From: Mytilus californianus
Lineage: Eukaryota
Direction: 5' to 3'
DNA: 64,000 bases
Assembly: GCF_021869535.1 (NCBI RefSeq)
Contig: NW_026262696.1
Location: forward strand, 806,001 to 870,000
The notes beneath the pieces were generated by a model. The model was not told where the DNA came from and made no database searches. It worked only from the letters and a program-made list of their open reading frames with translations. The number at the start of each line of letters is the position of its first letter. Position 1 is the first letter of the stretch. The translations under genes and the position numbers were made by a program. This document shows positions 16,518 to 63,764 of this stretch, one piece after another.

Positions 16518-19500
16518 TTAATATGCCTTGGCTGTCACCTTTGTTTGAATACCGTGCACCATTGTTCCGGTGTTGGTACTTGTTTGTGTTCCTGTTGATG
16601 CGCTTGCTGGTGCATAGTTTGTCTGAAAATAAAGAAAAACAATGATAGGTTTTATCTGTTATCAGTGCTATATGGCATAAGTATAAATCAAAACTCACCA
16701 AAGGTACCATGCTTATAATGTGTTCGCTTCACGCGCGTTTTGTGTCGAAAGTTTCATCCGTGAAGTTTGAGTCAAAAATATTCAAAAGGCCAAACAAAGT
16801 ACAACTTTGAAGAGCATTGAGGACCCAAAATTCCAAAAGGAAAATCTATTACACCTTTTCACACCATTAAATGATTCCGATTACATATTTCAGTATCTAT
16901 CATTACTTCATAAACATACGGGATTGGCAAAAGCTCAAGTCTTGTATAGAAATTAATTACATCGTTGTTTTCAAAACTTTATTTTAGCCTACACATCCGA
17001 ATAAAGATTTGCAATAAAATCTAGGAAACAGATTAATGAGTTAAAAGCTTCTTTCCGAATCCTATCAATTATTCAATTGTATTAATATGTTTATGCCAAA
17101 TTGTTTATATTATTTAACTTGAATTGAATAATTAAATATGTTTACACTAATAAATTTTCCATAATACACTGACACACACACAAATAATTCAACGATAGTA
17201 GTATCATCACTTGAAAACAATTCGCTTAAAAATATTAGGCTGCATAAAATTTAAAACATTACAACTCCTTTTGTACATGGCATATAGTATATTATAATTA
17301 TAATTATTATTATTATTATTATTATTATTATCATTATCATTATTATTATCGTTATTATGATTATTATTATTTTTAATGTTCTTTATTTTCTAGCTACGTT
17401 TGCTATTCTGAATTTTCTTTGATATTTTCATAAACAAGTTTTTTTTTTGTATAAGGAACTAACTTGATCTGCTCTCGGTGACATATTACAGGATTTATTC
17501 GCTGACGGTGACATAACAATGTTTTGATCGGCCGTTGTTGACATAATAATGGTTTGATTGGCTGGCGGTGAAAATAGTTATGTTTGATTGGCTGACAGTG
17601 ACATTATAATGTTTAGATTGACCATTGGTGACATATTAATGGTTTGAACGTCCGTCGGTGACATTATAATGTTAAAATCGACCGTTGGTGTCATAACAGT
17701 GGTTTGATTGACCGTTGATGACATAATTATGTTCTGATCGACACTGGATGACATAATAACGTTCTTACCTTGATCACTGTTCCCCCTGTTGGATATTTTG
17801 GTGGTGCAGGGGCATATCCTATACAAAATGGAAAAGAGTTTTTAACTTTAACTACAATTTGTTATGATATACAATTATTTGATAAAATGATAATCTTACA
17901 CAACCAATGTATTTTTGGTTTTCAGACATTATCTTATTTTAGTTGAAAAATAATAATATTCTAGAGCTTAATTTAACCCCTTTTAATCGTAAACAGTAAA
18001 CCAAAGCAAACTAGTGGCGCATGCATGAAAGACATAAATAATGTCAACTCAGAAATGAGTGTGTATTTATTATTTCAAATGTTGAATATTGAATTTCTCT
18101 TATAAGCCCATACATTTATTTGAGAGAACATCAAGTTCAAAGGTAAATTAGAATATTGCGAATGTGACAGTTTGCAAACGGGTATTTAGTAAATATATTG
18201 TCTAGAAAGTGTAGCAATGATAATCTTAAAACATAAACTTCCTTGTACAGTCAGCACTGGCTGTATCATATGTGAGGGGCCTGATGGGTTATTTTCGTTC
18301 TTCGTGATCGGCGCATTTTCGCTATCGTAATCCGTTTTTCTACATTTTCGTGATCCTTGATCATGGAAATTTATTTTCTGTGAATCGTGATTGACAAAAA
18401 AATCAACTCGTGAATCGTGATGAGACCCCCCCCCCCCCCCCCCCCCCATCAGGCCCCTCATATGTAGATTGAAAACAAGATATATAATAATGCCTTTAAC
18501 TTACCTATTTGTGGAAATTCAAATATCACCTTGATAAAACCTGCAATAAAAAGGTAAAGATTTGAAAATAAAATTAACAGCTATGGATTGTATTTAAATG
18601 AAAATTTGGAAAAATTGAGGCATCGGTAGGGTTTTTTATATGAACAGTTTCGAGAACAAAACGAAAAAGAAAAAATAAACAAATAACAAAATGCAAAATG
18701 CAAACACAAAAAAAAAATATATCAATTAACCATATTTACATTTTACGGTGTTATGATCTTTTAATGTGCTTTAATTGTGGCAATGTTTCTAATGTAAGGA
18801 TGTCAGTATATTTTTTATATACACCTTACATAATTTTGTATCTTATTTTCCGCAAGTAAACAATAGACGTAAATGGAAATAAGACTTATTAAATTTCCTG
18901 TATCCGAATCCTTTTTCTGGAGTTACCTTCATCAGGAACGTCCAAACCTAAACATTTAGAAGCCAGAGATTGCATTCATCAAAAGATGTGATTCGTCAAA
19001 AGATGTGATTCATCAAAAGATGTGATTCATCAAAAGGTGTGATTCATGATGTGATTCATCAAAAGATGTGATTCATCAAAAGGTGTGATTCATGATGTGA
19101 TTCGTCAAAAGATGTGATTCATCAAAAGATGTGATTCATCAAAAGGTGTGATTCATCAAAAGATGTGGTTCATCAAAAGATGTGATTCATCAAAAGATGT
19201 GATTCATCAAAAGGTGTGATTCGTCAAAACTTATACAAAATCTTTATGTAAATATCTATTAATCGTGGTTTTGCTCTTTGTTGAATATGGTTGTATTTGT
19301 TTTACATTCTTGGCCTTTGGTCTTTGTTGAATAGTTTTGTCATTGTCAATCATGCTATATATCCTTATTTGTTATATCATGTTATTCATGAATGGATCAG
19401 TTATTAATTTTTATTTCAGATTTTGTTCTGATTTAAATAATTTTTGTTTGCGTTCTTTTAATTAACATTTGGAAGCATTCTGTACACATGTATTCAAAGT

Positions 19501-63764: not shown

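What the first reader, a model, noticed from the sequence alone, without database searches (positions are those of the whole stretch)
16518..63764. Length-locked collagen pair: 13 of 13 helix exons identical in size between two diverged paralogs
Both Col-A and Col-B have helix exons of 171, 342, 342, 450, 90, 252, 27, 90, 216, 126, 567, 171 and 270 nt, in the same order. The X/Y residues differ heavily: only 7 of 30 triplets are identical in the 270-nt exon. Introns and C-tail exons (36 vs 51 nt, 105 vs 177 nt) differ freely. Zero net indel per exon in a slippage-prone repeat implies strong selection on helix length and register. Inference: the two chains co-assemble as a heterotrimer (alpha1/alpha2) or in a staggered fibre, which may be an undescribed bivalve collagen system.
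Basis: partly seen in the sequence, partly recalled or inferred. Interest (0 to 1): 0.82.

Follow-up and report, generated by a model that had tools for sequence, protein, structure and literature searches.

The report
Tandem pair of long VWA-collagen genes
Two neighbouring, anciently duplicated collagen genes of a bivalve-like genome have kept all 13 pure helix exons the same size while the sequence diverged; this is usual for collagen gene families, but the protein type is unusual and the two chains also match in a second, shifted register that I cannot explain.

Summary
Col-A and Col-B lie head to tail on the minus strand. Each has 13 helix exons of 171, 342, 342, 450, 90, 252, 27, 90, 216, 126, 567, 171 and 270 nt. 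All introns between them split a glycine codon and have AG/GT ends. Each set encodes 1038 residues of unbroken Gly-X-Y. X/Y identity is 30% and synonymous sites are saturated, so the duplication is old and no recent gene conversion is visible.

Five of the seven other coding exons differ in length. The helix-start exon is 99 vs 102 nt (8 vs 10 triplets), so total helix length differs by two triplets.

Each protein is: signal peptide, one VWA domain, a CxxC motif, a helix of about 1065 residues, and a short tail with no known domain. It lacks the fibrillar C-propeptide and the C-terminal VWA domains of collagen VI.

Length locking is not special to this pair. A second tandem VWA-collagen pair on the same contig also has matching helix exons (90/36/45/405 nt).

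The heterotrimer idea is neither shown nor excluded. Charge-pair counts allow both forms, and one run appears to hold Col-B without Col-A.

New and unexplained: the chains are as similar at a shift of +2 triplets as in the exon register.

The parts
36798..36864 (-). Col-A coding exon 1: start codon and signal peptide, 67 nt, ends in phase 1
   Evidence: Col-B has a homologous 67-nt exon outside the window.
34134..34432 (-). Col-A VWA exon 1, 299 nt (Col-B: 296 nt)
   Evidence: Pfam VWA E=2.7e-15. 58% identical to Col-B.
33474..33771 (-). Col-A VWA exon 2, 298 nt (Col-B: 292 nt)
   Evidence: Pfam VWA E=1.3e-16. 54% identical to Col-B.
32840..32938 (-). Col-A junction exon, 99 nt: second Cys of CxxC, a 7-residue spacer, then the first 8 Gly-X-Y triplets (Col-B: 102 nt, 10 triplets)
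32006..32176 (-). Col-A helix exon 1, 171 nt
30556..30897 (-). Col-A helix exon 2, 342 nt
29537..29878 (-). Col-A helix exon 3, 342 nt
28050..28499 (-). Col-A helix exon 4, 450 nt
27227..27316 (-). Col-A helix exon 5, 90 nt
26348..26599 (-). Col-A helix exon 6, 252 nt
25960..25986 (-). Col-A helix exon 7, 27 nt
24929..25018 (-). Col-A helix exon 8, 90 nt
24231..24446 (-). Col-A helix exon 9, 216 nt
23703..23828 (-). Col-A helix exon 10, 126 nt
21549..22115 (-). Col-A helix exon 11, 567 nt
   Evidence: Pfam Collagen E=4e-31. RNA junction with exon 12.
20361..20531 (-). Col-A helix exon 12, 171 nt
   Evidence: RNA junctions on both sides.
19512..19781 (-). Col-A helix exon 13, 270 nt, His-rich
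   Evidence: RNA junctions. His count.
18505..18540 (-). Col-A tail exon 1, 36 nt (GFIKVI...)
   Evidence: RNA junctions.
17769..17818 (-). Col-A tail exon 2, 50 nt (GY.P.PP.Y motif)
   Evidence: RNA junctions.
16518..16622 (-). Col-A last coding exon, 105 nt including the stop (ends ...TKVTAKAY)
   Evidence: No Pfam match.
63594..63764 (-). Col-B helix exon 1, 171 nt
62340..62681 (-). Col-B helix exon 2, 342 nt
60921..61262 (-). Col-B helix exon 3, 342 nt
59636..60085 (-). Col-B helix exon 4, 450 nt
59277..59366 (-). Col-B helix exon 5, 90 nt
57306..57557 (-). Col-B helix exon 6, 252 nt
56747..56773 (-). Col-B helix exon 7, 27 nt
55364..55453 (-). Col-B helix exon 8, 90 nt
54748..54963 (-). 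Col-B helix exon 9, 216 nt
53978..54103 (-). Col-B helix exon 10, 126 nt
52504..53070 (-). Col-B helix exon 11, 567 nt
   Evidence: Pfam Collagen E=2.6e-35. Its words are held in RNA-type runs.
51619..51789 (-). Col-B helix exon 12, 171 nt
50652..50921 (-). Col-B helix exon 13, 270 nt
50361..50411 (-). Col-B tail exon 1, 51 nt (GFIKVI...)
49991..50040 (-). Col-B tail exon 2, 50 nt
49111..49287 (-). Col-B last coding exon, 177 nt including the stop (ends ...TKVEAKAY)
   Evidence: No Pfam match.

Best explanation
Col-A (1355 aa) and Col-B (1382 aa) are old head-to-tail tandem paralogs, each with 20 coding exons. They encode two alpha chains of a secreted, non-fibrillar collagen. Each chain has a signal peptide, one VWA domain of the collagen-VI kind and a CxxC motif. 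An unbroken helix of about 1065 residues (about 300 nm, inferred) and a 62-92-residue tail with no known domain follow. Shown: both frames are intact, Col-A splicing is confirmed by RNA contigs, and exon words of both genes occur in RNA-type runs. Inferred: the helix is poor in proline (6-7%) and rich in Lys and Asp/Glu, with about 60 KG[DE] motifs per chain, so interchain salt bridges probably hold it together. Inferred: folding probably starts at the N-terminal end, where the CxxC motif and most Y-position prolines lie. The 13 pure helix exons kept their sizes because triplet indels are selected against in a helix whose charge pattern must stay in register with its partners. This constraint is general to collagen paralogs and does not by itself say who the partners are. 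My odds: A and B meet in one assembly, either a heterotrimer or a mixed polymer of homotrimers, about 0.5; heterotrimer specifically, about 0.35.
For: Gene models and exon sizes. RNA junctions for the Col-A 3' half. VWA and Collagen domains. No COLFI domain on this contig. Old duplication: Gly third-position identity 0.37 against 0.32-0.41 at other shifts; dS 1.7 or undefined; VWA identity 54-58%. Indels occur in 5 of 7 non-helix exons and in 0 of 13 helix exons. An ungapped alignment is as good as gapped ones. Cys positions are conserved at 27, 79, 220/217 and 223/220. Y-position Pro is 12 and 11 in the first 36 triplets and 0-1 in each bin over roughly the last 100, with 59 and 61 KG[DE] motifs. 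The nearest VWA relatives are multi-VWA proteins with helices of about 330 residues. Runs X1-X8 and X11 hold words of both genes. Canonical heterotrimer registers score 328-422 net charge pairs against 378 (AAA) and 383 (BBB), and shifts of two or more triplets mostly drop to 250-320. The +2 similarity peak fits contact in an N-terminally flush register.
Against: No protein data exist. No orthologues from other species could be fetched, so helix length across species is untested beyond one relative about 5% diverged (X11). Sample S25 (runs X25, X26) holds 0.71 of the Col-B exon words. X26 gave no coverage of any Col-A exon in the laid 5.8 kb, which argues against obligate co-expression; whether that run is RNA is a guess. 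A raw RNA run of the same species (X23, 6% read) had no Col-A exon reads. Each chain alone scores as well as heterotrimers for charge pairs. Col-B splice junctions rest on consensus sites only.
Confidence: 0.6

Rival explanations
1. The two chains never meet. Each forms homotrimers (A3, B3) with its own expression pattern. Exon sizes stay equal because triplet indels are rarely tolerated in any long collagen helix, or because each homotrimer must fit the same kind of lattice.
For: AAA and BBB score 378 and 383 net charge pairs, within the heterotrimer range of 328-422. X26 holds Col-B words but no Col-A exon. A second paralog pair keeps exons of 90/36/45/405 nt although its X/Y identity is at noise level. 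Helix length constancy is known for fibrillar collagens (PMC4450265). The mature proteins differ in predicted pI, 6.9 against 9.3.
Against: It gives no reason for the similarity peak at +2 triplets, unless features are measured from the N-terminal end of the helix in both proteins. Nine runs hold words of both genes. The Cys pattern and the tail motifs are conserved.
Confidence: 0.33
2. The equal sizes reflect a recent duplication or ongoing gene conversion, so no long-term constraint is needed.
For: The genes lie in tandem, 12 kb apart, in the same orientation.
Against: Nucleotide identity is 60% and X/Y identity 30%. Gly-codon third positions are no more alike in register than out of register. 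dS is saturated. No patch structure is present.
Confidence: 0.01
3. One copy is a decaying pseudogene or an assembly duplicate.
For: None found.
Against: Both have 20 intact coding exons with consensus splice sites and no stop. Exon words of both occur in RNA-type runs of several species labels. The sequences differ at 40% of bases.
Confidence: 0.01

Closest known systems
Collagen VI alpha1/alpha2 (human COL6A1/COL6A2)
   Same: VWA domain next to a Gly-X-Y helix. Two chain genes lie head to tail (PMC3189202). The chains of collagen VI form heterotrimers (PMC12354898 abstract). The best VWA matches in the representative search are multi-VWA proteins with helices of about 330 residues. From my own knowledge, not tested here: collagen VI helix exons are multiples of 9 nt with split Gly codons, as found here.
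   Different: The helix here is about three times longer (355/357 triplets) and unbroken. There are no C-terminal VWA domains, no Cys inside the helix and only one VWA domain.
Fibrillar collagens (types I, II, III, V and invertebrate relatives)
   Same: A long unbroken helix of similar length (1065-1071 against 1014 residues). Helix length and exon pattern are held constant across old paralogs (PMC4450265, PMC2852846).
   Different: There is no C-propeptide; COLFI matches lie only on contig C88. Exons are not of the 54/45-nt kind and split the Gly codon. A VWA domain stands where the usual N-propeptide would be. No 234-residue periodicity was found. Proline content is very low.
Second tandem VWA-collagen pair of the same contig (C116:992441-1025141)
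   Same: VWA exon followed by phase-1 helix exons, tandem on the same strand, and identical helix exon sizes in both copies (90, 36, 45 and 405 nt) despite strong divergence.
   Different: The helix is short (192 residues) and has one interruption.
Mytilid byssal preCols
   Same: Bivalve collagens. Col-A has a His-rich stretch at the end of its helix. The comparison rests on my own knowledge of preCols.
   Different: PreCols have a much shorter helix, flanking silk- or elastin-like domains and no VWA domain. None of these was seen here.

Membership tests
Collagen superfamily | Gly-X-Y triple-helix repeat (Pfam PF01391) | tested here: met
   E=4e-31 and 2.6e-35 for exon 11 of each gene. Gly at every third residue over 1038 residues.
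Collagen VI | N-terminal VWA domain(s) | tested here: met
   One VWA domain split over two exons in each gene.
Collagen VI | Short helix of about 335 residues with a Cys and interruptions | tested here: not met
   355/357 unbroken triplets, with Cys only before the helix.
Collagen VI | C-terminal VWA domains | tested here: not met
   The tail is 62-92 residues with no Pfam match. RNA contigs run through the stop codon.
Collagen VI | Heterotrimer of different alpha chains | not testable with these tools
   Only indirect data: both genes' words in the same runs and the charge-pair count.
Fibrillar collagen | C-propeptide (COLFI, PF01410) | tested here: not met
   All nine COLFI matches in the genome lie on contig C88.
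Fibrillar collagen | Unbroken helix of about 1014 residues | tested here: inconclusive
   The helix is unbroken but 1065/1071 residues long, and no D-period signal was found.
Fibrillar collagen | Helix exons of 54/45 nt or their multiples that start with a whole Gly codon | tested here: not met
   Exons are multiples of 9 nt between phase-1 introns that split the Gly codon.
FACIT and collagen XXVIII-like VWA collagens | TSPN domain or a second VWA/Kunitz domain, and an interrupted helix | tested here: not met
   Signal peptide, VWA and CxxC lead straight into the helix, the tail has no domain, and the helix has no interruption.

The most novel reading that the evidence does not exclude
The second similarity peak at +2 triplets is a footprint of physical contact between A and B chains in a register other than the one they inherited. 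Col-B starts its helix two triplets earlier than Col-A (10 against 8 triplets in the junction exon). If the two helices are laid flush at their N-terminal, proline-rich, Cys-linked ends, Col-B triplet i lies beside Col-A triplet i+2. That is the only shifted register with a signal, and it has the predicted sign. The peak is interleaved site by site with the inherited register, so indels or conversion tracts cannot explain it. Selection for matching residues between partner chains, or for features placed at a fixed distance from the helix start, would explain it.
Probability: 0.2. Interest if true: 0.8.

Novelty: new variant of a known kind. Interest (0 to 1): 0.5.

Why it matters
Three points matter.

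First, the domain layout matches none of the collagen types compared here: a single VWA domain, then a fibrillar-length unbroken helix, with neither a C-propeptide nor C-terminal VWA domains. It suggests that a collagen-VI-like ancestor lengthened its helix about threefold in this lineage.

Second, the helix is held together mostly by charge and very little by proline. That is of interest for collagen stability rules and for materials work.

Third, the two-register similarity could become a sequence-only way to read how two collagen chains are aligned in an assembly, if it proves to be a footprint of chain contact. Chain register in heterotrimers is otherwise hard to establish (PMC12562938 reviews the problem).

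The length lock itself is ordinary for collagen gene families and should not be scored as a surprise.

Tried and rejected
- **Orthologues.** The profile search of 1.84 billion representatives with VWA exon 1 ranked multi-VWA proteins first. It gave only exon-sized fragments of close relatives (P0050, P0066, P0068). Their contigs are 570-1665 nt and carry no helix exon.
- **Word searches.** Helix exon 11 and VWA exon 1 each found two proteins and no full-length relative, because of the length filter. A spliced full-length query could not be given by reference, so none was sent.
- **Recent duplication or gene conversion.** Rejected.
- **Mosaic of compensated indels or conversion tracts as the cause of the +2 peak.** Rejected. 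Gapped alignment gains little. The difference between the two registers has no positive autocorrelation. Simulated mosaics with mean segments of 2 triplets are disfavoured (P about 0.01) and those of 3 or more are excluded (P<0.001).
- **Period-2 self-repeats as the cause.** Self-similarity at lag 2 is only 0.19-0.21. Matches free of self-repeat still number 75 at +2 against 28-52 at other shifts.
- **A 234-residue or other long period** in charge or hydrophobic residues: none found.
- **Charge-pair model.** It does not separate homo- from heterotrimers.
- **Internal exon duplication.** No strong signal; the best lag is 17 triplets in Col-A, z=4.5.
- **Not run.** A complex prediction was not requested. 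Any Gly-X-Y chains would be drawn as a triple helix, so a pass would not have changed my odds.

Full report
**Where it lies.** The window is G000:C116:806001-870000 of a 1.65-Gb genome and contains no N. Gly-X-Y open frames occur only on the minus strand, in two groups at 19.5-32.9 kb and 50.6-63.8 kb. I fetched 20 kb before and 40 kb after the window. There are no further collagen genes in those 124 kb, and the 5' part of the second gene lies just past the window's end.

**The observation.** Each Gly-X-Y run is bounded by AG on one side and GT on the other. Each exon starts with the last two bases of a Gly codon and ends with the first base of the next. The sizes are 171, 342, 342, 450, 90, 252, 90, 216, 126, 567, 171 and 270 nt in both genes. 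A 27-nt exon with the same structure lies between the 252-nt exon and the 90-nt exon that follows it, in both genes. All sizes are multiples of 9.
- The joined exons give 1038 residues with Gly at every third place in both genes.
- Nucleotide identity is 60% and X/Y identity 30%. The 270-nt exon has 7 of 30 identical triplets.

**Full gene models.** I also placed the signal-peptide, VWA and junction exons. Both genes have 20 coding exons and intact frames of 1355 and 1382 residues.
- Col-A exon sizes: 67, 299, 298, 99, the 13 helix exons, then 36, 50, 105 nt.
- Col-B exon sizes: 67, 296, 292, 102, the same 13, then 51, 50, 177 nt.
- Five of the seven non-helix exons differ in length, and none of the 13 helix exons does.
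- The junction exon carries 8 triplets in Col-A and 10 in Col-B. The whole helices are therefore 355 and 357 triplets, and the lock is not absolute at the N-terminal end.

**Transcription.** Words of the 567-nt exon of each gene occur in many runs of several species labels. Nine runs hold both: X1 to X8 and X11.
- I laid four runs on window:16400-22200. Contigs of X1 and of X11, a poly-A RNA library, skip exactly the five introns of my Col-A model.
- X11 differs from the window at about 5% of exon bases and shows no indel in helix exons 11 to 13.
- X1 carries a 6-nt deletion in the last coding exon, which fits a freely varying tail.
- X26 shares a sample with X25, and both hold 0.71 of the Col-B exon words. 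X26 covered only intronic repeats of Col-A. This hints that Col-B can be expressed without Col-A, but whether that run is RNA is a guess, and I could not lay it on Col-B.
- X23, raw RNA of the same species, gave no Col-A exon reads in the 6% of the run that was read.

**Age of the pair.** Third positions of Gly codons are 37.0% identical in the exon register and 32-41% at other shifts. NG86 dS is 1.7 for the helix, 2.5 for the tail and undefined for the VWA domain. The VWA exons are 54% and 58% identical in protein. The duplication is old and no recent conversion is visible.
- A rough yardstick: the VWA domain shows two indel events beside about 85 substitutions.
- At that ratio, the roughly 486 X/Y substitutions of the helix would come with about 11 indels. 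None is seen.
- The ungapped alignment is not beaten meaningfully by gapped ones.

**What the protein is.** Pfam finds one VWA domain and the collagen repeat, and nothing in the tails.
- Four Cys are conserved. Two of them form a CxxC just before the helix.
- COLFI, the fibrillar C-propeptide, occurs only on contig C88.
- In the genome itself, Col-A and Col-B are each other's best match for both the VWA exon and the 567-nt exon.
- The next-best VWA exons belong to genes with short helices.
- Among 1.84 billion representatives, many of the top VWA matches are multi-VWA proteins with about 330 residues of Gly-X-Y, which is the collagen VI layout.
- The helix has 6-7% Pro, 15% Lys, 16% Asp+Glu and about 60 KG[DE] motifs per chain.
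- Y-position Pro is concentrated in the first 36 triplets and is almost absent from the last hundred.
- I infer a charge-stabilised rod that folds from its N-terminal, Cys-linked end. This is inference, not shown.

**Is the length lock special?** No. About 130 to 190 kb further along the same contig lies another tandem pair of VWA-collagen genes. Their helix exons are 90, 36, 45 and 405 nt in both copies, although their X/Y identity (0.20) is no better than at other shifts. Published work describes the same constancy for fibrillar collagens (PMC4450265). COL6A1 and COL6A2 are likewise head-to-tail neighbours (PMC3189202). Equal exon sizes are therefore a habit of collagen families, and they do not identify the partner of a chain.

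**Heterotrimer or not.** I counted axial and lateral Lys/Arg-Asp/Glu pairs for every chain order.
- Homotrimers give 378 (AAA) and 383 (BBB).
- The six canonical heterotrimer registers give 328 to 422.
- Shifting Col-B by two or more triplets mostly lowers the count to 250-320.
- The chains are therefore compatible in register, but so is each chain with itself.
- No long period in charge or hydrophobic residues was found.

**An unexpected second register.** I scanned shifts of -30 to +30 triplets.
- X/Y identity of Col-A[i+k] with Col-B[i] is 0.298 at k=0 and 0.286 at k=+2.
- All other shifts give 0.172 +/- 0.019, and k=-2 gives 0.186.
- Identical whole triplets number 36 at 0, 36 at +2 and 8-16 elsewhere. 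Mean BLOSUM62 scores show the same two peaks.
- The peak survives removal of Lys, Asp and Glu. It persists across exon borders at 12 of 48 sites.
- It is not a patchwork. The two registers are interleaved site by site. Simulated mosaics with mean segments of 2 triplets are disfavoured (P about 0.01), and those of 3 or more are excluded.
- Neither chain repeats itself enough at lag 2 to explain it.
- Synonymous sites carry no signal at either register, so both peaks are kept at the protein level.
- The shift equals, in size and sign, the two extra triplets at the start of the Col-B helix. Laid flush at the N-terminal helix ends, the chains are in the +2 register. Counted from the Cys or from the GFIKVI tail, they are in register 0.
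- I cannot decide between contact of the chains in that register, a common ruler measured from the helix start, and something I have not thought of.

**Verdict.** The constraint on length is real and old, but it is ordinary for collagens. The protein architecture is an unusual variant. Co-assembly of the two chains stays open, at roughly even odds. The two-register similarity is the part that deserves a follow-up.

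Noticed in passing
window 19512-32176 and 50652-63764 (helix exons of both genes): Col-B triplet i is as similar to Col-A triplet i+2 as to Col-A triplet i: 36 identical triplets at each, against 8-16 at all other shifts. The two registers are interleaved site by site. The cause is unexplained.
   Followed up: yes
G000:C116:992441-1025141 (loci L024-L027): A second tandem pair of VWA-collagen genes on the minus strand has helix exons of 90, 36, 45 and 405 nt in both copies. 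Each has one interruption, displaced by one triplet between the copies.
   Followed up: partly
window 15692-15735 (+): A hammerhead type I ribozyme-like site scores 24 bits against a gathering score of 34, with E=0.0025 in a 701-nt search. It was not found at the gathering threshold on the whole window. It lies about 800 nt beyond the Col-A stop codon.
   Followed up: partly
window 45932-46436 and 46448-46919: Two adjacent minisatellites lie in the 12-kb spacer between the genes: a 45-nt unit in 11.2 copies at 97% match, and a 51-nt unit in 9.3 copies at 95% match.
   Followed up: no
window 16599 and 16516: The contig of run X1 has a 6-nt deletion in the last coding exon of Col-A and a 6-nt insertion just past the stop codon. 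This is in-frame length variation in the tail, while the helix exons show none.
   Followed up: no
window 16788-16981, 18146-18533, 18728-19115, 21056-21249, 22026-22200: Intronic stretches of Col-A are covered at high depth in all four runs, including runs without exon coverage. They are probably transcribed or multi-copy repeats.
   Followed up: no
G000:C68:2190000-2273000 and G000:C116:1638000-1658500: Other Lys/Asp-rich collagen genes match helix exon 11 at 51-60% identity. Some have open frames of 965-972 aa without introns.
   Followed up: no
window 19512-19781: The C-terminal end of the Col-A helix is His-rich: 7 His in the last 31 triplets, against 2 in the last 33 of Col-B.
   Followed up: no
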